Assembly: GCF_021869535.1 (NCBI RefSeq)
Contig: NW_026262615.1
Span: forward strand, 36,208,001-36,272,000
Length of the DNA stretch: 64,000 nucleotides
From: Mytilus californianus
Lineage: Eukaryota
Direction: 5' to 3'
The translations under genes were made by a program, and so were the position numbers. Below, one piece after another: positions 21,761-58,306 of this stretch. The first letter of the stretch is position 1, and each line of letters starts with the position of its first letter. The notes under the pieces are model-generated. The model did not search any database and had not been told where the DNA came from. It was given only the letters and a program-made list of their open reading frames with translations.

Positions 21761-22615
21761 GAAATGTGATGAAATCACCATACTATCTGGCATGCACAGG
21801 CTATTGGACACAGACGGCTGCACAAACATAAAATTCAATTTTTAATGTAGGGTCACTTCCTTTTAATAAGTTCTATACCGTTTTCCGTTTTTCAGAATGT
21901 TTAATATATAAACGAAGGAAAACTTTTAAAAGTCTTTCAAATGCCAATGGGTGGCAATTTATTAAACAATATATCAATTGGTCAAAATTTCATTATTTTA
22001 CAGTAGCATTTTATCATCCACAGTATTTATGAATAGGAACAGATTTTCATGTGCATGCATGATATAAACTATACTAATAAGTCGAATTTTTTTACATAGC
22101 CTATAATATATAAATGGGGGTATTTTTTGAATGCAAATGGCACCCTTATAACAAAATATAGGTGACCCATCCATACTTCCCGACCCCAGATCTTTCTTAG
22201 GACACGCGATGCGACAAAACGAACACAATTTGTAACTCCCATCATTTGCTTTATGTAAGCCACGCCGAAAAACAGATTATTTTAGCATTCCAGGGATCAA
22301 TCAATTTTAAGAAAATATGGAAAATATATGCAACAAATGGCCGTCCAACTTTGATGTATACCCATGTTTTAGGGGAATTAGTGGCTTGGGGAAAAAGTGG
22401 CTATATGTACACGTATTGTCAAATTTCCTCCGGGGAGTGAGTTAATGGCAATGATACAAAATTTCCTCAAGGGAAAAATGAGATCATGCCAGTTTTTCCT
22501 TTCAAGGCCCCAAATTCATATCGTAAAAAATGTGTTGTGTTTACAAAACAAAAACGATTATTCTGAGAATAATTTATTTCATCATGCTAAACTCGAGGGG
22601 TCACAATAATCATCT

Positions 22616-25600
22616 TCACGCAGTGGTTAATTGTCCACAAGTTTCATTTATCTCCTGTCGTAAGTCGTCGTCTATTGTGCACTGCTTACGTGTGTTCTTC
22701 ATTTTACGACTACATGTATATCTACCATATTTTCTATAGCCTTTTTTCTGTCCTGGTTTACGTTTGTTCTTTATTTTACGACTACATGTATATCTACCAT
22801 ATTTTCTATAGCCTTTTTTCTGTCCTGATTTAGGACTGCGACTAGCACTATCATCCTCATTAGCACTGTTATCTATAAGCGCGAGGAGTTTACGGCAGAA
22901 CGATTCAAGGGGAGAATCAATTACAGGATTGCATCCCGCAAATTCAATTGACGGGTCTTGGATGTTACAACCATCTGGAATGTTGCAAACAATTGGTCTA
23001 GTGGTCGGAACAGTGACTGAAATGATAAATATTTATTTTTTTCAAATGGATTCGATAAGTTAGCATATATGATGATTTTCAGTAGATTTTTTGCAAAAAA
23101 TAACTCATTCAGTAAACTAAAATCAGTAACAGCGGCTAAAAATTTTAAAATATTTTTACAACGTAATATTAATATCATTCGTTTACGGCAAAGACACAAG
23201 CACAGATAACTATACGACAAAATGTACACAGAAAGACAGACAGACAGACAGACGTGTGTTGATAGGTAGGTCTGTACTGATTTTTTTTAAATATATACAA
23301 TAATTTACAAATTTTAGTCGAAAGAATGTATTTATGGTATACTATAATTTTATTTAAATAAAAATAAAACAATAAAATAGAGTGTGTATTAATTATTTTT
23401 TCTTGAATGAAATATACTGGAATACTTTCTTATTCCGAAATATAAATGTAAAGATATTTACTTTTGGTATATATAGGCATTGTTTGTAATTGAAGGAGAA
23501 GCAGAAAACCTTGGCCGTGTCGACGCACTTATCTTCGTTCAGTTTTGATAATGCTATATTATAGCTTGTTTCGGTTGTTTTAATTGGACTAAGTCTTGTG
23601 AAATTTCTATTTTATATACTAAATACTACTAAATATTCGGTACAGACTATTTGCATGTGTAAGCAGTTAGTTTTTCTAATCGAGTACACTTATTCTAATA
23701 CTTTAATTTGCCTTTACTCTTAGAAATATTATAACCCATGGTACCGTTAATGCTATTAGTATAATGTCAATACTTGACGAGCTTGAATATCTTCGTACAT
23801 ATAATTATTAGTAAGCTTTTTAATTTAACATTAACTTTATATTGAAGTAAATTTATTTCAAAAAGATCATTGCTTGTAGCTACTCAAAACTTACCATTAT
23901 TTGGTCTAGCACTAAAGGCTGCAACATAAAGAAAGAAACTTATAAAAATATATATAATAGGCATGCGCAAAATAAGTATTTCTGGAATGAAATGTTGATT
24001 TTGTTTGTTGTCAGCACGTTTCTTATTCAAGTATGCATTTCAATTCACTTTTCGTGTGTTTTAAGGAGAATGTTCTCCTGAACTAGTCTACAAACACACG
24101 TTATGCAGGAAGTTGGCATCTACGAAGAAAATAATTACATGTTCAGGATGTTGCTACTTAATTTACATACGTTGAAATACCAGAGAAAAATAATAAATGA
24201 ACACAATACGCAATAACATTCATTTGGTTTACCTGCAAACAAATTAGTCTCACGTCAACATCAGTTACTTACATATAAGAAGTCTCACTTCAACATCGGC
24301 TACTTACATATAAGAAGTCTCACGTCAACATCAGCTACTTACACATAAGAAGTCTCACTTCAACATCAACTACTTACATATAAAAAGTCCCACGTCAAAA
24401 TCAGCTACTTACACATAAGAAGTCTCACTTCAACATCAGCTACTTATATATAAGAAGTCTCACGTCAACATCAGCTTCTTACAAATAAGAAATCTCTCGT
24501 CAACATCAGCTACTTACAAATAAGAAGTCTCACGTCAACATCAGATGGATTGGGAATTCCATTATCATTCACAGGTCTGCATATATCACAGAGAGGTGGT
24601 TCACTAGAATACAGTGTGTCTGGCGGTGAAAATGGATCTGAAACATTAGAGAGCATGTAGTATATAAACCAAAACGAAATAGTAAGCTATTATCAAGACA
24701 TTTGTTTAATTTCGAAAATTTGAAGTACACGTAATCAGGCGACATTTCAGATTTAGATGAAATGTTGTATAAGATCTACTTGAACTGCATATGAATATCG
24801 AAAAATAATATATGTAGCTTTTATGCATCCAGATATACAGTAATTAAACATTTGTGAAATAGGCCTTGATATGTAATATGATATGTATGTTAAAATCGAC
24901 GGAAATTTGCATTTTGTCTCTTTAAATAAAGATATGTGTCAAAAATCCGTCCACAGGATTTTGTTTGAAAATCATATTTTATTGCTATAAACATTTACTT
25001 TATCGATATGAAAATTGTCGCCATAATCGTGTTTTGCTGTCTAAATCATCTTAGTATGAGTGATGAATGAAAAATTATGAACAAATACGATTTCGCAGCG
25101 TGACGAATTCACGACGTTATAATTTTAATTGTATTGTTTTACCCTTTTTCACGCTTTATATCAAGACTTATTTATGTCTACAGAAAGAACGAATACGGTG
25201 ACTGCCTATCATTTCCATATCATTAAAACCGATAAAAAATATATTACCTGTTCTATTTAGCGTAAATGATGCAACTTCAATAAAATCATTAGAAATAACG
25301 CTAATTTTGAAGCACCAATAGAAATATTGACCATCTTTCAATGGACCCGAGACCCTGAAAAAAGTAATTATCGGTACACAATTGACAAATTCGTTATCGA
25401 TAGTATAACACAAGTTGTCATAGTGTTATATGACAGTCAAAGTTACGCTAAAACCCAAAACTTTGAAAGCAAACGGCGTATACGTAACTTAGCACATAAA
25501 TGTTGTATGACTTAAAGGGATCTAGACGGATAGCCAAATCCATCATAGGTCAACTTTGCCTGAGGGAGTCTCTAAATAGTTCTAAATAATTCTAAATAAT

Positions 25601-28600
25601 GTATATGTATATATACAATAGATATTTCAGCTGATCTGTAACAATTCCATCTTCATGCCTTATATATCATGTACTGTATTACGACGCTAGATTAAAACTG
25701 ACGAGGAAAGGTAACACCCGGCCACCGAAAGCTTTATTTTGTGAAGCCTAGGTGGTCGTGTGGTCTAGCGCGTCGGATACAGTGCAGGCGATTTGGTGTC
25801 ACGATATCTCAGTAGTATGAGTTCGAATCCCGGCGAGGGAAGAACAAAAAAATTGCGAAAGCAAATTAATCAGATCTAACATTGTTGGGCTGATGTTTAG
25901 ACGAGTTGTATATATACAAGTCGAAATTGAAAACAACGTTCAAACCTATGATTGCGTTGGATAAAAACCGCAATTTTTATACGTGTGCATGCAAAACAAA
26001 TGTCTTGTTAGAGGGGTCTAAATACATCACAAACAACATTTTCCAAAAGACAAAAAAAGTGAAAAAGTATATTTTAACAAAACGCATTTGACTAACAGGT
26101 CGAACAACAAATGCTCTTAATTGCTGACTGCCATTGGCGATTGCCAAATAAACGGATCACCGATGTAATAAATGGATCTTAATTATAAATTTAATACTAA
26201 ACAGAAAATAATAAACTTGCGGAAAAGATGGTATACCGCAAACAAATGGTGCAAAGGTTTTTGTACACCATATCCGGATTTCGACAATTAATGCCTCTTC
26301 AGTGATGTTAGGAATCGAAACGGTATTTGGAAAGTCATACAATTTACCTCAATTTAGGATAGACTCTTGAATTTTGAGGAGTCAAAATAGGATGAACGGA
26401 TCATATAAACCCGAAGGCAAATATAATACAAGCCTATATATATATATATATCTACGGACAATTTAAGAAAGGTATGGCATAATTCACGTCAGTATCGAAG
26501 CTCTGGCTACTGCATGTGGTACTAGCCGTAATGATACTCTTTGATATTGCGTATTATTTCAGAAAGCGGCTTATTGCCGATTTTCAATTGATGGGTAAAC
26601 ACAACAGGAGCAGATGACCTTTCCGGAACACACCCCGTCAGTATTTTAAGTGGGGTTCGTGATGTTCAGTCATTGGCTTCTATATTTTCTTTGGTTACAT
26701 CTTCTGACATCAGACTCGGACTTCTCTTGAACTGAATTTTAATGTGCGTATTGTTATGCGTTTACTTTTCTACATTGGCTAGAGGTATAGGGGGAGGGTT
26801 GAGATCTCATAAACATGTTTAACCCCTCCGCATTTTTGCGCCTGTCCCAAGTCAGGAGCCTCTAGCCTTTGTTAGTCTTGTATTATTTTTAATTTTAGTT
26901 TCTTGTGTACAATTTGGAGTTTAGTATGGCGTTCATTATCACTGAACTAGTATATATATTTGTTTAGGGGCCAGCTGAAGGACGCCTCCGGGTGCGGGAA
27001 TTTCTCGCTGCATTGAAGACCTGTTGGTGACCTTCTGCTGTTGTCTGTTCTATGGTCGGGTTGTTGTCTCTTTGACACATTCCGCATTTCCATTCTCAAT
27101 TTTATTGTAATTGTTGTTTGTCCTTTCGACGTTTTAACTTTTTCGCCATGGTATTGTCTGCTTTTGATTGGACTTTTGATTTTCGGATAACCTTTAAAGA
27201 TCTTCTTTCTCTCTTGTTTATACATCATATTTTTCTGCGATAAAACAGCTTTTCAACGGAGCTTCAAATGTCAAACTTTAATGAAGGGGAAATAAAATAT
27301 CAAAACGTACCTTAACATGTAAAAGTCCCCGTCACGTTCAATGCATTCAAGTTCAACTTGTTCTTCGTGAACTGATTGTATTGCAAATACTGCACCATTT
27401 TGTGGGTCCGCATTTGGTATCCCCAAAACATAACTGTTTTGATTTAAAACAATTTCTCCGTATGTGTTGCCAATTATTTCATTTGGAAAACTGCAGTTGG
27501 CATCTGGAAAACACAATTCAAAGCAAGTCACAAGAATAAAATATCTGTTAGAAAAGGGACTGTAATGAAATGGTCCATTTGATTGAGATATTCTTTTCAA
27601 AAGCTTATTCAATAAGGTCCTAATTTCAAAGACTAGTTAAAGTCACAGCTCAAAGACAAAAGAAAAATTGTAAAAAAAAAAAAACAATTACAAAAAATTG
27701 GGCTAAACTAATCAACGAGGCAATGTTTGACCATGAAGGCTTTGTTATGACGTTTAGCTTTCTTCTGAAAAATGATGGTGAACAATTATACCGTAGTATA
27801 GAAGTATGGTCATCATTTCAATTCTCCCGTCTGGTAATAAAACCCTTGCTGAAGTGGGCTGTCAGTTTTGACTGTACGAAATAAATTATCAGCCATGTCT
27901 GCATGGTCAGAATGGGGACGTGCACCTGCAAGTTAAGGAATCTTTGCAACAACTCTCTGGTGAGTCCGAAGATGACCTGAAGCGGGTACATTTTATATTC
28001 CTATCAAACATACCCTCATTGTCCAGTGGACCTACCTTGCAGAAACTACATATTGCATCAATTGGTTATTTCCCCGGCCTTAATATGCATGAAATCATTT
28101 CCCGTGTTCGTTCAGCCAGCAACAAACAATAGATCGATTATGGTAAATAATATACAGAGATTAAATATGTTAAGCAAATAAGAAAGTCTATGCAGTAAAA
28201 TTAAGACGTTTTCCTTGGCTTATGTTTACGGAAAAAGGGAGACATTTTTTGTACATGGTCTTATCATCTGCTATCAGTTCTCTTATAGAAAATAAGAGAA
28301 CAATAGAAAGAAGAGAAAAGTTTAATTAATCTTATTAAGAGAGGAAATACAAATTTCCGAATGAATTAATGTCACACAAGGGCCATTTTAAATTCATTTT
28401 TCAATCTTTTTTTTAAATTTACAGAATAAAAAAGAGAGGCGAAAGATACCAAAGGTATATTCAAACTCATAAGTCGAAAACAAACTGACAAAGCCACGGA
28501 AAAGAACGAAATACAACGAAAAGACATGTGTTACATGGATGTTCTTTGAGTTTTTTAACAATAGAAATGGTGAAATTCTGAACATGTAACCAACAAGGTT

Positions 28601-29203
28601 AAAAACTGCAACTGTTCAGAATTTTGAGTACTTTCCTCAAAAAAGAAGGAAGTTGTTAATGAAAGCTAAAATTATTTCGGCAGTAAATATCTGTTTAAAA
28701 ATAAGAGATGTGGTATGATTGCAACTCTCCACCAGACACCAAATGACCGATAGAAGTTAACAACTATAGGTTTAAACCGTACGGCAAAACACATACCGCA
28801 TAGTCAACTATAAATAGCCCCAAAATGACAAATGTAAAATAACTCATTCATTTCCTTTCAAGTATAAATCGATTCATTTTGAATAATGGTGTCATTTTAA
28901 TCAACATTTTACAAAAACATGCAAAATTTACAATATTGTAATAAAAATGTCCTTCAACATTGCTTTTTTTTTTATGTATTATATAAAATTATTGAAAATT
29001 TTTAAAGCAAATTATTTAGACTCTGCCATGTTCAGATTTTGACCAAATGTTTATAACAAATACATAGGAATTGGTTCTTCCTCTAACTGTTAAATGCTTT
29101 AACCTGTATTCATATACTGTAATTCAAACTAGCAAATTAAAATTAGTGTTATTAAAACCATACCTGAACCGACTATTAGGCTTGCTACAAAAAACAATAA
29201 CAT
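22616..29203 (-). CDS. Uncharacterised secreted Cys-rich protein with a duplicated cationic K/R/Y/G-rich tail; complement(join(22616-23016,24518-24637,25248-25354,27311-27503,29164-29203)), 286 aa
   Basis: Exons of 40+193+107+120+401 = 861 nt; all introns GT-AG with matching phases (1,2,1,1) and no internal stop. Hydrophobic N-terminus MLLFFVASLIVGSDA followed by NCSFP; 13 Cys; in-frame 72-bp repeat encoding GQKKGYRKYGRYTCSRK twice; TGA at 22618-22616. Confidence 0.85.
24246..24544. repeat. 35-bp tandem array (8.5 units) overlapping the exon 4 / intron 4 junction of the secreted-protein gene
   Basis: The unit agtctcacgtcaacatcagctacttacatataaga starts at 24246 + n*35 (checked at 24526). Alternating cacgtc/cacttc variants give a 70-bp sub-period. 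Confidence 0.97.
25745..25920 (+). mobile_element. tRNA-headed SINE-like element in intron 2 of the secreted-protein gene
   Basis: A-box-like tggtcgtgtgg (25753) and B-box gagttcgaatcc (25819); no closed cloverleaf. Confidence 0.6.
26684..27105 (-). mobile_element. Dispersed interspersed element (partial copy); near-identical inverted copy at 53394-53813
   Basis: The reverse complement matches 53394-53813 with only a handful of mismatches over ~420 bp. Confidence 0.9.
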
Positions 29204-29469
29204 CTTCGTTTCAAATGGAATTGATACACTGTTGCTAAAGAACTATTTTCATGCTTTATACCGATATTGCATTCACATCTGTTTAACGATTTCACTTTGA
29301 ACCTAATTAAATCACACACTTATACTTTGTTTTACAGTTACTAAAAGGAAAATAGTGACTTTTAAAATACATATTTTTCTTTAATATTTTAATTTCCTTT
29401 GTTATCTGTTAAATTATGGTTGATACAATGATCAAACAGACTATTTGTAGCACTACAAACAGCTTAATA

Positions 29470-29777
29470 ATATTACAGAAACTCATCCGACATGTTCTCG
29501 AAATATTGAAATGTTCAAATTGTCACTCAGAATATTACAGAAACTCATGCGACATGTTCTCGAAATACTGGAATGTTCAAATTGTCACTCAGAATATTAC
29601 AGAAACTCATGCGACATGTTCTCGAAATACTGTAATATTCAAATTGTCACTCAGAATATTACAGAAACTCATGCGACATGTTCTCGAAATACTTTAATGT
29701 TCAAATTGTCACTCAGAATATTACAGAAACTCATGCGACATGTTCACGAAATACTGAAATGTTCAAATTGTCACTCA
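29470..29777. repeat. 62-bp VNTR, 5 units, 270-570 bp upstream of the secreted-protein ATG
   Basis: atattacagaaactcatgcgacatgttctcgaaatac...gttcaaattgtcactcaga at 29470, 29532, 29594, 29656 and 29718. Confidence 0.97.
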
Positions 29778-30049
29778 TATCGTATGCTTCTTGGATTTTG
29801 TACATTCAATCAATTAATACTTAACTCTTCACAGATACAAAGATCCATATTGTTTACGCCAGTAATGAAAGCTGGTTTATTTAGTTGTGGAAACCAGTGT
29901 GACAATATACTGATGATTAATTCACTGCTACAGTCCCGATCTGAAATTCGTTCAAATTTTGTCTTTTTTTACTTTAATACCGACCGCTGAATGTACATTG
30001 AAATAATTTGACGAGTGATGCATGCAGGGTTAGAGAAGTCTACTGTGTC

Positions 30050-37644: not shown

Positions 37645-40600
37645 ATGGACCATCAAGAAATGGACCACCAAGAAATAGGAATCAAAAGGGTAACAACGGA
37701 AGATTATGAACGAGTAATGGCGATATTACCCCCAGATGAAATCTATCATGGAGGTGATTACCTGCCAGACTATTTCCACATGTTGCTTGAAATGCCAAAC
37801 ATAGAGATGTATGCAGCTGTCGCCGGAGATAAATTTGTAAGATTTCTTATCAAAATTATTATTAGTTGTTTATGAAAGAGTAATTAGTAAAGAAGTATTG
37901 TACGTAAAAATGGAAACATTCAGAGAAAAAAAAACACTCCCCGAAAAATATATTCAAATTAAAAATTTGAAAAGAAAGAACGAAGCTTTGATTTTTATAT
38001 GACGATATTCAACAATATTTTGCAACAACACTTTTATTGTATATGAAAAAATGTTACAAGCATACTTTTGTCATTGATGTCGATAATTTGAAGCCATATC
38101 ATATCATAGAATATTGCACTCTAACTTTTTGTTACGCACTGTGGGAAATATTTCGTTGTTATATACAATAATAGTTTACAATATAGCCTTCGTATGAGGT
38201 CGACACGAGGATATATCAACCTGAAAGATGTATATCGACTGAAGACAAAGTATTTGGTCGATATATATCTTAAGGTCGACCTCATACAAAGGCTTCAGTT
38301 GTTATATTATTGCTATTTTTAATAAACCTAAAATTGAGCATGAAATCATTTGATTGGTTTGTTAAAATGGTGTCATAAAGGATTAAGGTTTTTAGATTTT
38401 AAATTTTGAAATATTTTGAAAACCATAATCCTTTATGGCACCATTTGCAATATCACATTTCTTTCTACGGTTTTCAGTATATTTTTGAAAATACAGGTGA
38501 ACACGTAACTCTTTGTGAACGAATCAAATAAGTTAGAATATACAAAATAATAATATAAAATAATACTATAAGATTTACCTGTCAGTGATTAAATTGATTT
38601 CCCAGGTTGGATTCAGTTTTATGAGCATAGTGGATGATGGTAAAACTGTAGTACCACGAGGCGGTCGAGTTTCGAAAGAATATTCTGGTAAAGGACTTGT
38701 CGGGCTAATGTCGAAATGGTTGGACGAAGGAGGACCACTTTACCGACAGGGATTTTTATATAGAGCCGCTATAGGAAATAAAGAAAATGCTCCACTGCTT
38801 CAACACGCTCGAAAAGGATTATGCAAAGAAATTCTTCAACAGGTTTATTTACAAATTTATGTTTATTTACAAATGTTCCATTTAAAATTTTTAAACAACC
38901 GTTTTCATTAAGTTGACAATTTTGTTATAATTTGACCGCAGTATGAAGATGTGAAAGTGTATGAAACATGTATGATATAGGAATAATTGATATTGAAAAA
39001 CATTGGAGAGATATGTTTAATATGTTTCAATTAATTTATTGTTGCTTTCTGATTGAGGCCCAGTGCCAATATGTCATGCATATAATATTGATACAAAATT
39101 AAGATAAAAAATCTTTCTATATCAATTGATACAACGTAGGATCTGCAATTTAGATAGATCGAGATAAGTGTAGGAATAATAAACGCAAAAGGAATCATAA
39201 GGGAATGTTCGATAGGAACACACATTTTTCTTTGCAATACGGGACAGTCAAAGAGTGTCTGTACTGGTTCCTTAGTGAAATATACCTTTTTTCATGGATC
39301 AGAGATAGTTTTTTACGTGGTAATCAGTTACTTTGTTACTAATATCAATTCATTTGTATACTATAATAGATAAATATAAAGCCGGGCTGTAAGGTGTACA
39401 CGTCCGGATGACATATTTAAAAAATGTCAACTGACCTTGACATTTTTTTGGATGTTCAAGGGTCAATGTTTCTTAACATGCTTACTACATGTAAAGGTCA
39501 GTTTATCATTTGAAAAGGTTAACTATATTTCGTCTTTTTATATTATAAGTATATGAGGTTTACATGTCTTTCTGACATGAGTTACCTGATCTTGACCTCT
39601 ATATGCAGTTAAATGATCAACGTTAATCATGTAAAGTTTTCGCGCATAAATCATTTCCCCTGATCTGATAAAACTGTGTTTATAGATCCTTAACACAATT
39701 CTAAACACATCTTATGTGCATTTTTTTACACGTTTTGTTCTAAACATGTCTCAGTTCTAAACAGACTGTTTACGTGGACAATGTGTTTAAGATTGTGTTT
39801 AGGATCGTGTTTAGCTTAGAAATAAGTGTTTTATTTCTAAACATTTTCTTTCTTAAACACATTTAAAAGTGTTTAAATTCAAGACGTGTACGTTTAATGT
39901 GCTTACTGAGAAATGTGTTAAGATATTAAATACAATCCTAAACACGTTAAGAACTAAACATGTAATACATGTGTTTATATTCTAAGCACCATTTTTACAT
40001 TGTGTGTAATAGGTCAGCTGTGGTCGATGCAATTGTTTGACGGGTAATATACTTTGAAATACCACAGTTTGATACGAGCAGTTCGGACACAATAATGGCT
40101 GTGTACACGTTTTGCCACAATTGTTAGGATAAATAATGTTTTTTCTATGGGTAACCAATCTAAAAACCAAAATAAAAACATAAAACTATCAGATCAACAT
40201 ATTGCACAATATTTAGCAAGTACACAAGCACGGTAATGTACACATTTTGATATCATGTTAAAAATAGCATGACAAAAACTTAAAATACAAATATTTCTAC
40301 ATTTCATATTTCATTTATTCAGTTTCAATTTTTATTTTGCAGGACTTTCGCTTTTACGACATTTGGAAATTCAATCTGGAAGATGAATTTAAGAAGCAAA
40401 GGGAATCAAACCAGTTTGTAAATGCACGATTTATCGAAAAAGATGAGTTTGGTCAAATACTAGAATCACGTGATCTTAGTCGATATTTTTTTCCAGAAGG
40501 CCGTGCTGTTGTTGACGACGTACCATACAAAACTATGCGATCAAATGCTCCACTGATATTTACAGAACGCACAAAAGTAGTAGTGACTGATACTAATAAC

Positions 40601-40894
40601 CCACACGAAGCCATTTTATCAATTAGTAATTTTTTCAAGGCCCCTGTTGGAATGATTGTAAATTTGAATATATATGGCTGTTTGTCCGAAAAAATCAAAT
40701 CTCATTTAATCTTACATGTCGAAAAACTGCTTCCCTGTTTAAGGAGCGACTTCATACTATTCCGTTGTATATCAAAACCAGATACAAATTGGGCAAATTT
40801 GGACAACGTGATGACTGAATTAGGTTTTAAAACAACACATTTTTATGGAACAGGTTTAGTTTGTGTGGAATGGAATTTAAAAAGCAAATTGTAA
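37645..40894 (+). CDS. Histidine N-acetyltransferase / NAT16-like GNAT, paralog B; join(37645-37836,38606-38842,40343-40894), 326 aa
   Basis: GT-AG, phase-0 introns at the same positions as paralog A; exons 2 and 3 have identical lengths (237 and 552 nt). IYHGGDYLP and VDDGKTVVPRGGRVSKEYSGKGLVG motifs; open frame to TAA at 40894. Confidence 0.87.
38185..38294. repeat. Inverted-repeat (hairpin) element in intron 1 of paralog B
   Basis: agccttcgtatgaggtcgac (38185-38204) matches the reverse complement of 38275-38294 at 19/20; further gatatatc/tcgac symmetry inside. Confidence 0.75.
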
Positions 40895-56900: not shown

Positions 56901-58306
56901 TTTCTTAGTTCCTCATTGATGAATTTAGAAATTAATAAAGAAAAACTACCTCAGACAAAGTTGATATCTATGAATATGGATTTAGCTATTATTTTCATGT
57001 TCTTTTTGGTCACACAGCTATTAACATGATTAACGTATTTCAATACTTATACATGTACATACTTGGCTTTCAAATATTTGGCTTTGAGCGATCCTAATGG
57101 AGGTAAATCTAGAAAAGCTCTTTGGACACCTATTATTTATTAAAAGTTATTTCCATTATTATGTATATGCATCCAAAATTTATTGAACAAATATAGGTCG
57201 CAACACTTTTTCCAATGTAAAAAAATCACAGCTTTATAGGCATGCTATTTGCGAAATTATTTTTTTATGGACCAAATCATATATCTTTAGAAATTGATTA
57301 CTTTTAGAGTCCATTATGAATATCAATCGGTTTTCAGGAAATTAAAAGGGAAAAGGCACTGTCTCCTATTAAAGAATTATAATTTAAAAGAAGACTTAAT
57401 GGGAATTGCTGTTTTAATAAACTGATGCAACGTATACAAAACCTAGCATGAATTTCAAAACCCTATTGATTTGTTATCATTGATTTGTTATCATCGAATT
57501 GTTATCATTGATTTGTTATCATTGATTAGTTATCATCGAATTGTTATCATTGGTTTGTTATCATTGATTTGTTATCATCATATTGTTATCATTGATTTGT
57601 TATCATTGATTTGTTATCATCGAATTGTTATCATTGATTTGTTATCATCATATTGTTATTGATTTGTTATCATCGAATTGTTATCATTGATTTGTTATCA
57701 TTGATTGTTATCATTGTTTTGTTATCATTGATTTGTTATCATTGAATTGTTATCATTGATTTGTTATCATTGATTTGTTATCATCGAATTGTTATAATCG
57801 AATTGTTATCATTGATTTGTTATCATCGAATTGTTATCATTGATTTGTTATCATTGATTTGTTATCATCAAATGTTATCATTGATTGTTATCATTGATTT
57901 GTTATCATTGATTTGTTATCATCAAATGTTATCATTGATTTGTTATCATTGATTTGTTATCATTGATTTGTTATCATTAAATGTTTACACGTCTGATAGC
58001 TATTGTTTAAATTTCAGAGAAATCGAAGATGCTGTCGAGCGTCTAGAGAAAGCGCATGAGCGTCATATCAAGGTTTATGACCCTAAGGAGGGGAAAGATA
58101 ACGAGCGTCGATTAACAGGCAAGCACGAAACATCCAGCATTTATGAGTTTTCTGCTGGTGTAGCGAATCGTGGTGCAAGTATTAGAATTCCACGTCAGGT
58201 AGCGGAAGACAAATGTGGTTATCTGGAGGACAGACGACCATCTTCAAATTGCGATCCCTATGCTGTTACAGAAATCATTGTAGAAACTACTCTTTTGTCA
58301 AAGTAA
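50469..58306 (+). CDS. GLUL: Glutamine synthetase type II; join(50469-50625,51476-51637,52827-52973,54386-54713,58018-58306), 360 aa
   Basis: 157+162+147+328+289 = 1083 nt, GT-AG, phases 1,1,1,2. Signature motifs [76 protein letters not shown] and [11 protein letters not shown] are all intact. Confidence 0.97.
53394..54290 (+). mobile_element. Longer copy of the interspersed element at 26684-27105, in glutamine synthetase intron 3
   Basis: The first ~420 bp match the reverse complement of 26684-27105. The right boundary is approximate and based on recall of the family. Confidence 0.75.
55252..55697 (+). mobile_element. HINE (Helentron-associated interspersed element) in glutamine synthetase intron 4
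   Basis: T-rich flanks, subterminal inverted repeat atgccccac (55256) / gtagggcat (55663), a (gtcc)n microsatellite, and two 175-bp cores at 55325 and 55500. Confidence 0.75.
57465..57977. repeat. 14-bp minisatellite (~37 units, atcattgatttgtt and variants) ending 40 bp before the last glutamine synthetase acceptor
   Basis: Direct reading; variants include atcatcgaattgtt, atcatcatattgtt and atcatcaaatgtt. Confidence 0.97.

What the first reader, a model, noticed from the sequence alone, without database searches (positions are those of the whole stretch)
22616..29203. Hidden five-exon gene: secreted Cys-rich protein carrying a doubled cationic Lys/Arg/Tyr/Gly tail
Seen: five phase-consistent exons give a 286-aa protein. 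It has a signal-like MLLFFVASLIVGSDA, an acidic Cys-containing body (NCSFP...LECIER...YWCF...LCDIC...CNIPDGC...GC...FC), an acidic Ser/Asp linker (DNSANEDDSAS), then an in-frame 72-bp duplication. The second unit, KPGQKKGYRKYGRYTCSRKIKNKR, has 11 of 24 residues K/R, 3 Tyr and no acidic residue, and is bounded by dibasic RK/KR sites. A short acidic end follows. The ORF track shows only unrelated-looking fragments of it. Established: mussel adhesive (mfp-3/mfp-5) and many shell-matrix proteins use K/Y/G-rich cationic segments, and acidic pro-regions often neutralise cationic defence peptides. Inference: this is a modular secreted precursor whose tail is a releasable antimicrobial-like peptide or a DOPA-modifiable adhesive/biomineral segment, with repeat number varying by unequal crossover. 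I recognise no named family.
Basis: partly seen in the sequence, partly recalled or inferred. Interest (0 to 1): 0.85.

Follow-up and report, generated by a model that had tools for sequence, protein, structure and literature searches.

The report
Mussel secreted barrel protein, doubled cationic loop
This is a real California-mussel gene, already in RefSeq as a 5'-truncated "uncharacterized protein", for a secreted protein of a mussel-only family whose function is unknown; it has a probably lipocalin-like barrel and a strongly positive low-complexity segment that this species alone has doubled.

Summary

**Gene model**
- It has six exons, not five.
- The window is Mytilus californianus. RefSeq lists the gene as LOC127723576 (XP_052086208.1, 219 aa), which lacks exon 1 and therefore the signal peptide.

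**Relatives**
- Full-length relatives in M. coruscus and M. edulis confirm the N-terminus, the micro-exon and the cationic segment. M. galloprovincialis models, N-truncated and chimeric, confirm the last two.
- All relatives carry one cationic unit. M. californianus alone has a 72-bp duplication plus a 6-nt insertion that adds Thr-Cys.
- A second Mytilus subfamily (about 26-30% identity) keeps the same layout. Its basic block is almost Tyr-free and has no Lys-Arg site before the final Cys pair.

**Fold and family**
- No Pfam family matches.
- A moderate-confidence model of the N-domain is a lipocalin-like barrel. It is closest to predicted DUF7042/7043/7044 structures.

**Reading**
- The cationic part is an internal loop ahead of a conserved Cys-bracketed helix, not a free tail.
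- I read it as a charge-based tether that changes in length, rather than a DOPA adhesive or a clearly releasable antimicrobial peptide.
- Function is untested, so interest is modest.
- The scan had not found this gene on other DNA.

The parts
29255..29260 (-). TATAAA box 52-57 nt upstream of the start codon
   Evidence: Read directly from the sequence. Conserved in the M. coruscus ortholog but not in the M. edulis relative.
29164..29203 (-). Exon 1 (40 nt): start codon and the first 13 codons of the signal-like peptide, ending in phase 1
   Evidence: GT donor. The first 13 residues are identical in M. coruscus P0005, and M. edulis P0002/P0009 start almost the same way. The RefSeq model P0001 lacks this exon.
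27311..27503 (-). Exon 2 (193 nt): signal-peptide cleavage region and the first half of the barrel domain
   Evidence: AG/GT borders. Aligns to orthologs.
25248..25354 (-). Exon 3 (107 nt): second half of the barrel domain (YWCFK motif)
   Evidence: AG/GT borders. Present in P0001, which is 100% identical to the window's last exon.
24518..24637 (-). Exon 4 (120 nt): Pro-rich stretch with LCDIC
   Evidence: An RNA-seq contig of run X6 covers 24518-24640 with no mismatch and then leaves the intron.
23895..23918 (-).
   Evidence: ttgcag/gtaagt borders, in frame. Present in P0001 and all relatives. Conserved in L001 and L003. The X6 contig has 23 letters between the flanking exons.
22616..23016 (-). 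Exon 6 (401 nt including the stop codon): Cys module, acidic linker, two cationic units and the C-terminal Cys-bracketed helix
   Evidence: 100% identical to P0001 residues 88-219.
22874..22987 (-). Four-Cys module, C-x5-C-x11-C-x11-C, ending in the helix FCRKLLALI
   Evidence: All four Cys are invariant across both subfamilies. Helix seen in the low-confidence whole-protein model.
22841..22873 (-). Acidic Ser/Asp/Glu linker
   Evidence: The equivalent block in subfamily 2 is longer and rich in Ser/Glu.
22760..22831 (-). Cationic unit 1 (24 aa, 11 K/R, 3 Tyr, 1 Cys)
22688..22759 (-). Cationic unit 2 (24 aa, 10 K/R): one of the two 72-bp tandem copies, of which other Mytilus have only one
   Evidence: The DNA alignment A3 shows 78 extra nt relative to M. 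coruscus and M. edulis.
22619..22687 (-). C-terminal acidic helix bracketed by two Cys (C-x13-C)
   Evidence: Both Cys and their spacing are conserved in both subfamilies. Helix in model.
22573..22578 (-). AATAAA poly(A) signal 37 nt after the stop codon
   Evidence: Conserved in L001 and L003.
24246..24544 (.). 35-bp VNTR (8.5 copies) that starts in the last 27 nt of exon 4 and repeats its splice donor
   Evidence: Also present in M. edulis and M. coruscus. It is the subject of another note, s1-330684.

Best explanation
Shown: this is a six-exon, 294-codon gene of Mytilus californianus (RefSeq LOC127723576, annotated without its first coding exon). It belongs to a small family found only in Mytilus, with two subfamilies.

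The protein has these parts in order:
- a signal-type N-terminus;
- a roughly 100-residue beta-rich domain;
- a Pro-rich stretch;
- a four-Cys module ending in a helix;
- an acidic Ser/Asp/Glu block;
- a Lys/Arg/Gly-rich basic block;
- a final acidic helix bracketed by two conserved Cys.

M. californianus has doubled the basic block by a 72-bp tandem duplication. This came after, or together with, a 6-nt insertion that adds Thr-Cys to each unit.

Inferred: the beta domain is a lipocalin-like (calycin) barrel, akin in predicted fold to the uncharacterised DUF7042/7043/7044 domains of arthropods and molluscs.

Inferred mechanism: the acid-then-base stretch is a disordered loop that stays in the mature protein, held between two probably disulfide-linked helices. 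It acts through bulk charge. The basic block tethers the barrel protein to polyanionic extracellular material such as sulfated mucus, byssal or shell matrix, or microbial surfaces. The acidic block partly neutralises it. Loop length drifts by slippage or unequal crossover, so charge rather than sequence is what is conserved.
For: Gene model:
- Canonical junctions and one open frame.
- P0001 = XP_052086208.1 is 100% identical to the window's last exon and contains the micro-exon.
- The M. coruscus gene has exons of 40, 196, 107, 120, 24 and 323 nt. The M. edulis gene has 40, 220, 110, 120, 24 and 323 nt. Phases are the same as in the window.
- One RNA-seq contig joins exon 4, about 24 nt, and exon 6.

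Family range: three searches of 1.8 to 5.8 billion proteins returned only Mytilus-named proteins and three unnamed Logan contigs.

Conserved layout in subfamily 2 at about 26-30% identity.

Duplication specific to M. californianus.

Loop rather than tail:
- The C-x13-C after the basic block is invariant in both subfamilies.
- Subfamily 2 has no Lys-Arg before it and about 3% Tyr.
- A Logan relative, P0015, carries a long Gly/Ala/Ser insertion at the same place.
- The units are hydrophilic and not amphipathic.

Barrel:
- The N-domain model has pLDDT 57.9 and pTM 0.55, with an antiparallel meander.
- The best Atlas shape matches are DUF7042/43/44 clusters: TM 0.64 and 0.63, about 119-120 residues aligned, rmsd 3.1-3.2.
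- Language-model features point to the same clusters for two paralogs that are about 26% identical: 0.90 and 0.80.
- The unfiltered PDB scan lists lipocalin-like barrels: Tp0751 Z 8.9, BT_0846 Z 6.8, APCDD1 Z 6.1. APCDD1 barrels bind lipid (PMC10193966).
Against: - No functional or tissue data were obtained.
- M. californianus raw RNA reads (X23, about 6% of the run read) put nothing on the exons.
- The only RNA support is one contig at depth 5, from a relative that lacks the 6-nt insertion.
- Both structure models are weak: whole-protein pLDDT 40 and N-domain 57.9 in only one of five models.
- Pfam HMMs for DUF7042-44 or lipocalins do not match, even at E <= 10.
- PDB Foldseek rows are all E >= 0.03, and Z values of 7-8 are common by chance (note).
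- Disulfide pairing of the two helices is assumed.
- Subfamily 1 does carry furin-like RKRR/NKR motifs, so processing is possible.
- dN/dS of about 0.65-0.72 shows weak constraint, so part of the loop may have no function.
Confidence: 0.45

Rival explanations
1. Defence-peptide precursor. Proprotein convertases cut at the basic motifs and release one cationic peptide (two in M. californianus) that acts on microbes, as molluscidins or myticalins do. The acidic body and acidic C-terminus serve as neutralising pro-regions.
For: Charge layout: body -18, basic segment +23, C-terminus -4. Subfamily 1 has KNKR, RKRR and NKR motifs just before the C-terminal part. Mussel myticalin precursors pair a cationic Pro/Arg/Tyr peptide with a Lys-Arg site and an anionic extension, and molluscidins are unstructured peptides full of dibasic repeats (PMC5577615). 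Fast evolution (dN/dS 0.65-0.9 in the N-domain) suits immune genes.
Against: Subfamily 2 has no Lys-Arg before the C-terminal helix. The upstream boundary is a single Arg. Dibasic pairs are unavoidable at 42-46% K/R, so they are weak evidence. A conserved 205-residue folded body and a conserved Cys pair after the segment differ from myticalin precursors. In those, the peptide directly follows the signal peptide, the gene has three exons, and the acidic extension is 35-75 aa (PMC5577615). The units have 8% non-Tyr hydrophobic residues and muH 0.18.
Confidence: 0.2
2. Adhesive or matrix protein. The Lys/Tyr/Gly segment is hydroxylated to DOPA in a foot gland, or deposited by the mantle, and bonds to surfaces or mineral like mfp-3/mfp-5 or Lys-rich shell-matrix proteins. 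The adjacent acidic Ser block would allow self-coacervation.
For: The YRKYGRY-type motifs place Tyr next to Lys/Arg. Acid and base blocks sit side by side. P0015 has a silk-like Gly/Ala/Ser run in the same loop. Repeat-number change is typical of mollusc low-complexity secreted proteins. The new Cys in each M. californianus unit could cross-link.
Against: Tyr is 11-13% of the segment and 4.3% of the mature protein, against 20-30 mol% DOPA in Mefp-3/5 (PMC6680511). Tyr is nearly absent from the subfamily 2 basic block. The segment is only 22-48 residues of a roughly 280-residue globular protein. No accession or peptide of the family appears in the searchable literature.
Confidence: 0.12
3. Neutral low-complexity drift. 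The duplication and the 6-nt insertion are recent slippage events with no functional consequence, in a weakly constrained, lineage-restricted gene. Only the barrel and the Cys modules matter.
For: dN/dS is 0.72 against M. coruscus (16 non-synonymous to 6 synonymous changes) and 0.65 against M. edulis. All three differences between the units change an amino acid. Loop content varies freely across the family.
Against: A basic block following an acidic block is kept at about 26-30% identity across two subfamilies. The frame and both Cys after the loop are preserved in all intact members.
Confidence: 0.15
4. Two-chain maturation. The acid-base stretch is excised like a connecting peptide, leaving the body and the C-terminal helix joined by disulfides.
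For: Cys-bearing helices flank the loop on both sides. Basic residues lie at the downstream boundary in subfamily 1.
Against: There is no basic pair at the upstream boundary. Subfamily 2 has no Lys-Arg downstream either. There are no data on disulfides.
Confidence: 0.05

Closest known systems
XP_052086208.1, uncharacterized protein LOC127723576 (Mytilus californianus, RefSeq)
   Same: The same locus. It is 100% identical to the window's last exon and includes the micro-exon and both cationic units.
   Different: The RefSeq model starts at the Met inside exon 2 (219 aa). It therefore lacks exon 1, the signal peptide and the first 60 residues of the barrel, which orthologs show to be coding.
Mytilus relatives: CAC5371209.1 (M. 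coruscus), XP_071144192.1, XP_071142562.1 and CAG2253439.1 (M. edulis), VDI28750.1/VDI28751.1 (M. galloprovincialis)
   Same: Same six-exon structure and phases, as verified for M. coruscus and one M. edulis gene. Same Cys pattern, micro-exon, acidic linker, cationic unit and C-terminal helix. Identity is 94% (M. coruscus) down to about 70%.
   Different: They have one cationic unit of 22 aa without the Thr-Cys insertion. The M. galloprovincialis models and one M. edulis model are chimeric with neighbouring genes.
Subfamily 2: XP_052076699.1 (M. californianus LOC127714665), P0012 (M. edulis), the second half of P0013 (M. galloprovincialis)
   Same: Same overall layout, from the CSFPNE start to the C-x13-C end, with an acidic block followed by a basic block.
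   Different: Identity is about 26-30%. The acidic block is a long Ser/Glu run. The basic block is KGKKQ-type with almost no Tyr and no Lys-Arg before the last helix. Repeat number again differs between species.
Pfam DUF7042/DUF7043/DUF7044 domain proteins (arthropods, molluscs, rotifers)
   Same: Best predicted-structure matches to the N-domain (TM 0.64 and 0.63). Best language-model neighbours for two paralogs. They are eukaryotic and uncharacterised.
   Different: No Pfam HMM match at E <= 10. Nothing like the Cys-helix module or the charged loop was detected for them: there was no named neighbour for the C-terminal part. No paper mentions these DUFs.
Lipocalin-like (calycin) barrels, e.g. 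Treponema Tp0751, Bacteroides BT_0846, APCDD1 barrel domains
   Same: An antiparallel barrel of similar size: Z 8.9, 6.8 and 6.1 over 89-110 residues. APCDD1 barrels hold a lipid (PMC10193966), which suggests a ligand pocket.
   Different: Sequence identity is 4-6%. Foldseek E >= 0.03. The model confidence is only moderate. There is no lipocalin Pfam match. This shows a similar fold only, not family membership.
Myticalins and molluscidins (mollusc linear cationic antimicrobial peptides)
   Same: A secreted precursor (myticalins) with adjacent blocks of opposite charge. Tyr/Arg-rich or dibasic-rich unstructured cationic stretches (PMC5577615).
   Different: In myticalins the peptide follows the signal peptide directly, a Lys-Arg site is conserved, the acidic extension is 35-75 aa and the gene has three exons. 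[quoted passage not shown] Here a folded 205-residue body comes first, the C-terminus is 21 aa with two Cys, and the gene has six exons.

Membership tests
Pfam DUF7042/DUF7043/DUF7044 | Match to the Pfam profile at or above the gathering score | tested here: not met
   hmmscan of P0005, P0002, P0008, P0009, P0001 and the exon pieces at E <= 10 gave no such family.
Pfam DUF7042/DUF7043/DUF7044 | Same predicted fold as family members | tested here: met
   Atlas shape search: the top two rows are DUF7042/43/44 clusters, TM by query 0.64 and 0.63, 119-120 residues, rmsd 3.1-3.2. The query model has pLDDT of only 57.9.
Pfam DUF7042/DUF7043/DUF7044 | Nearest neighbours by sequence features | tested here: inconclusive
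   Scores were 0.90 (187 shared features) for the P0005 N-domain and 0.80 for paralog P0012, both to the same clusters. By the tool's own calibration, 0.8-0.9 also occurs by chance.
Lipocalin / calycin superfamily | Eight-stranded antiparallel beta-barrel | tested here: inconclusive
   The model shows six long strands plus short ones. VIA Z is 8.9 to Tp0751 and 5-7 to many lipocalin-like barrels. Foldseek E >= 0.03. Model confidence is moderate.
Lipocalin / calycin superfamily | Lipocalin sequence signature (Pfam Lipocalin families) | tested here: not met
   No Pfam hit. The PDB profile search gave only innexin-6 at E 0.058, which is noise.
Myticalin-type antimicrobial peptide precursors | Signal peptide directly followed by the cationic peptide, then a conserved Lys-Arg and a 35-75 aa anionic extension; three-exon gene (PMC5577615) | tested here: not met
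   The cationic block starts at residue 221, after a folded body. The C-terminal part is 21 aa. There are six exons. Lys-Arg is absent in subfamily 2.
Myticalin-type antimicrobial peptide precursors | Antimicrobial activity of the released peptide | not testable with these tools
   This needs peptide synthesis and assays.
Mussel foot proteins mfp-3 / mfp-5 | Small protein with 20-30 mol% Tyr/DOPA (PMC6680511) | tested here: not met
   Tyr is 11.3% of the 53-aa basic segment, 12.5% of each unit and 4.3% of the mature protein.
Mussel foot proteins mfp-3 / mfp-5 | Expression in foot glands and presence in byssal plaque | not testable with these tools
   Read tools are exhausted. The paper listing the newer M. 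californianus foot proteins (PMC5493799) is not held.
Mollusc shell-matrix proteins with repetitive low-complexity domains | Detection in a shell proteome or mantle-specific expression | not testable with these tools
   No accession or peptide of the family was found in the searchable literature.

The most novel reading that the evidence does not exclude
The family could be a mussel-specific class of secreted effector. A lipocalin-like barrel would carry or sense a small ligand. A built-in, self-neutralised polycationic loop would dock it on microbial or mucus polyanions, or be cut out as a defence peptide. Loop copy number would be tuned species by species: both subfamilies are expanded in M. 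californianus relative to the M. edulis copies.
Probability: 0.12. Interest if true: 0.6.

Novelty: new variant of a known kind. Interest (0 to 1): 0.33.

Why it matters
- The annotation can be corrected. The RefSeq protein lacks its signal peptide and would be scored as non-secreted.
- The work defines a small, uncharacterised, Mytilus-restricted secreted family. Its layout joins a likely ligand-binding barrel to a charge-patterned loop of changeable length.
- If the loop tethers the protein to mucus, matrix or microbes, or is released, the natural one-unit and two-unit versions in sister species give a ready comparison of how repeat number changes function.
- As it stands this is one of many lineage-restricted mussel secreted proteins, with no expression or activity data.

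Tried and rejected
- Pfam on exon pieces and on full-length relatives found nothing.
- A PDB sequence profile search gave only noise.
- The whole-protein AlphaFold model had pLDDT 40 and was not used for fold search.
- Foldseek against PDB with the N-domain model gave no row below E 0.03.
- The Atlas feature search of the C-terminal module found no usable neighbour.
- Read laying on 22500-28499 was swamped by high-copy repeats in introns 1 and 2. Only one informative RNA contig emerged. Run X1 looks like DNA because its pieces run into introns. M. californianus RNA run X23 showed no exon reads.
- Logan contig L002 turned out to be genomic, not a transcript.
- Literature searches for accessions, peptides and DUF7042-44 found no papers.
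- The DeMartini 2017 foot-gland paper is not held.
- No paralog exists elsewhere in the window.
- A second 24-nt candidate micro-exon at 24119-24096 (weak gtttgt donor) was rejected, because the annotated proteins carry the 23918-23895 sequence.
- The full 294-aa protein could not be submitted to the search or fold tools. It has no single reference, so relatives P0005 and P0002 stood in for it.
Full report
**Observation.** They join in phase into an 861-nt ORF of 286 codons.
- The start MLLFFVASLIVGSDA has a 10-residue hydrophobic core and small residues at -3 and -1 (Ser, Ala).
- The body up to the linker has pI 4.07 and charge about -18.
- The 53-residue basic segment has pI 11.2 and charge about +23. 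The last 21 residues are acidic again.
- Tandem Repeats Finder reports a 72-bp unit in 2.0 copies at 96% identity, at 22686-22832. In frame the units are 22831-22760 and 22759-22688. They differ at three bases, and each difference changes an amino acid.
- A TATAAA box lies 52-57 nt upstream of the ATG. An AATAAA signal lies 37 nt after the stop.
- The window holds no other copy of the gene.

**Correction of the model.** A HMMER search of 1.8 billion representatives with the last exon returned three proteins. The first, P0001, is 100% identical. It is XP_052086208.1, 'uncharacterized protein LOC127723576' of Mytilus californianus, so the window is M. californianus.
- They come from a 24-nt micro-exon at 23918-23895, with a ttgcag acceptor and a gtaagt donor.
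- The same micro-exon, with the same signals, is present in the M. edulis locus L001 and the M. coruscus locus L003. It is in every relative's protein model.
- Exon lengths are 40, 193, 107, 120, 24 and 401 nt here. They are 40, 196, 107, 120, 24 and 323 nt in M. coruscus and 40, 220, 110, 120, 24 and 323 nt in M. edulis.
- The protein is therefore 294 aa, and the direct 24518/23016 junction is not the form seen.
- P0001 in turn starts at the Met inside exon 2. It lacks exon 1 and the signal peptide.

- The useful result is one 411-nt contig, at depth about 5, of a run recorded as RNA-seq ('mollusc metagenome').
- It matches 22758-23017 and 24518-24640 with 23 unplaced letters between the two pieces and 7 unplaced letters beyond 24640.
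- That fits exon 3, exon 4, the micro-exon and exon 6 joined together.
- Its six gaps fit a relative that lacks the 6-nt insertion, so it is not from M. californianus itself.
- Raw RNA reads of the window's species, with about 6% of the run read, put nothing on the exons.
- Expression in M. californianus therefore rests on the RefSeq model. It was not verified here.

**Family.** Three large protein searches found only Mytilus-named proteins plus three unnamed Logan contigs.
- Subfamily 1 holds the window's gene, its M. coruscus ortholog (94% identity), two M. edulis genes and M. galloprovincialis models. Some of these models are chimeric with neighbouring genes.
- Subfamily 2 is about 26-30% identical. 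It has members in M. californianus (LOC127714665), M. edulis and M. galloprovincialis.
- Subfamily 2 keeps the whole layout: the CSFPNE start; the Cys of the beta domain; C-x5-C-x8/11-C-x11-C ending in an FC..LL helix; an acidic block, here a long Ser/Glu run; a basic Lys/Arg/Gly block; and a C-x13-C acidic helix at the end.
- No accession or peptide of the family occurs in the searchable literature.

**The duplication.** A DNA alignment of the last exons shows that M. californianus has 78 extra nucleotides relative to M. coruscus and M. edulis.
- These are the 72-bp duplication plus a 6-nt ACATGT insertion (Thr-Cys). The insertion is present in both units, so it came before or together with the duplication.
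- The cationic unit is otherwise well conserved across species, so it is not a recent read-through.
- In subfamily 2 the M. californianus copy has more KGKKQ repeats than the M. edulis copy.
- One Logan relative has a long Gly/Ala/Ser run at the same place.
- The region between the two helices is thus a hotspot for low-complexity gain and loss.

**Selection.** Nei-Gojobori estimates give dN/dS of 0.72 against M. coruscus (16 non-synonymous and 6 synonymous differences) and 0.65 against M. edulis.
- In the M. edulis comparison the ratio is about 0.9 in the beta domain and 0.24 in the Cys module.
- Counts are small. The gene is intact in four species but weakly constrained or partly diversifying.

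**Fold.** The whole-protein AlphaFold model was poor (pLDDT 40). It showed only a beta-rich N-half and two helices flanking the charged stretch.
- A second job on the N-domain, using both subfamilies, gave pLDDT 57.9 and pTM 0.55 in the best of five models, with an antiparallel meander.
- A shape search of the ESM Atlas put a DUF7042/7043/7044 arthropod cluster first and a mollusc DUF7042 cluster second (TM 0.64 and 0.63).
- Independently, the language-model feature search had already named the same clusters for the P0005 N-domain (0.90) and for the distant paralog P0012 (0.80).
- An unfiltered scan of PDB representatives lists lipocalin-like barrels: Tp0751 Z 8.9, BT_0846 Z 6.8, APCDD1 Z 6.1, then many at Z 5-6. 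Foldseek on PDB gives only weak lipocalin rows.
- Pfam profiles do not match, and no paper mentions these DUFs.
- I conclude that the N-domain is probably a calycin-type barrel and possibly a remote relative of the DUF7042-44 group. That group is itself uncharacterised. APCDD1 barrels bind lipid (PMC10193966), which is a hint, no more, of a ligand pocket.

**What the cationic segment is.** Four points argue that it is an internal loop acting through charge.
- It is followed in every intact member by a helix bracketed by two Cys at fixed spacing, and preceded by a Cys-bearing helix.
- What the two subfamilies share is an acidic block followed by a basic block. They do not share the sequence, the Tyr content (12.5% against about 3%) or a Lys-Arg site before the last helix.
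- The units have 8% non-Tyr hydrophobic residues and a helical hydrophobic moment of 0.18. This is unlike membrane-active helical peptides.
- Tyr content is well below the 20-30 mol% DOPA of Mefp-3 and Mefp-5 (PMC6680511).

The antimicrobial-precursor reading keeps some weight. Mussel myticalins pair a cationic Tyr/Arg-rich peptide with an acidic extension, and molluscidins are dibasic-rich unstructured peptides (PMC5577615). Subfamily 1 also has furin-like motifs. But the layout differs in every defining respect that I could test. The adhesive or matrix reading could not be tested for tissue or proteome presence.

**Verdict.** The gene is annotated, but 5'-truncated.
The protein is modular, secreted-type and without a named family, its cationic block is conserved, and the copy number of that block varies.
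- The specific claims of a releasable peptide or a DOPA adhesive are not supported by comparative evidence.
- My best mechanism, a retained charge-based tether on a lipocalin-like carrier, is an inference at about 45% confidence.

Noticed in passing
window 24246-24544: A 35-bp VNTR (8.5 copies, 88% matches) begins in the last 27 nt of exon 4. Each unit repeats the exon end plus a gtaagt donor and a tag acceptor. Using any later donor would add 35 nt and bring in a stop. The array is old: it is also present in M. edulis (L001 8366-8638, 7.8 copies) and M. coruscus (L003 7143-7251 and 7341-7543).
   Followed up: partly
window 29469-29777: A 62-bp tandem repeat (5 copies, 95%) sits just upstream of the gene's TATA box. 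It is conserved in M. coruscus (L003 2421-2731). It creates the 159-aa plus-strand ORF at 29511-29990, which is probably an artefact of the repeat.
   Followed up: partly
window 25500-27300 and 28300-28499: High-copy repeats in introns 2 and 1 attract very large depth on both strands in RNA and DNA runs. Reads and contigs repeatedly join 26434 back to 25910 (45 raw RNA reads in X23). Elsewhere, therefore, this element occurs as tandem or rearranged copies.
   Followed up: no
window about 28440-28475; M. coruscus P0008: The longer M. coruscus isoform inserts 12 residues (IYCRNEFEYTFD) after the signal peptide. The matching window sequence lies inside the intron-1 repeat and ends in a GT. This looks like exonisation of a repeat, or an annotation artefact.
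   Followed up: no
window 40337-40894 (+): A 185-aa ORF matches Pfam Hisat_C (histidine N-acetyltransferase C-terminal domain, E 2e-23). M. galloprovincialis models VDI28750.1/VDI28751.1 fuse a member of the family studied here to such a domain, which suggests an old neighbourhood or a merged gene call.
   Followed up: partly
window 57968-58306 (+): An ORF with a weak, sub-threshold match to the glutamine synthetase catalytic domain (Pfam Gln-synt_C, E 0.0098, 15.4 bits against a cutoff of 24).
   Followed up: no
M. californianus LOC127714665 (P0003), another chromosome: The subfamily 2 paralog is also annotated as N-terminally truncated (139 aa). It also has more basic repeats (KGKKQ x3-4) than its M. 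edulis counterpart, so both subfamilies are expanded in M. californianus.
   Followed up: partly
window 22616-29203 (Cys count): The mature M. californianus protein has 13 Cys. M. coruscus has 12 and M. edulis P0002 has 11. The two extra Cys come from the Thr-Cys insertion in each unit. Odd counts imply a free thiol or a disulfide-linked dimer.
   Followed up: no
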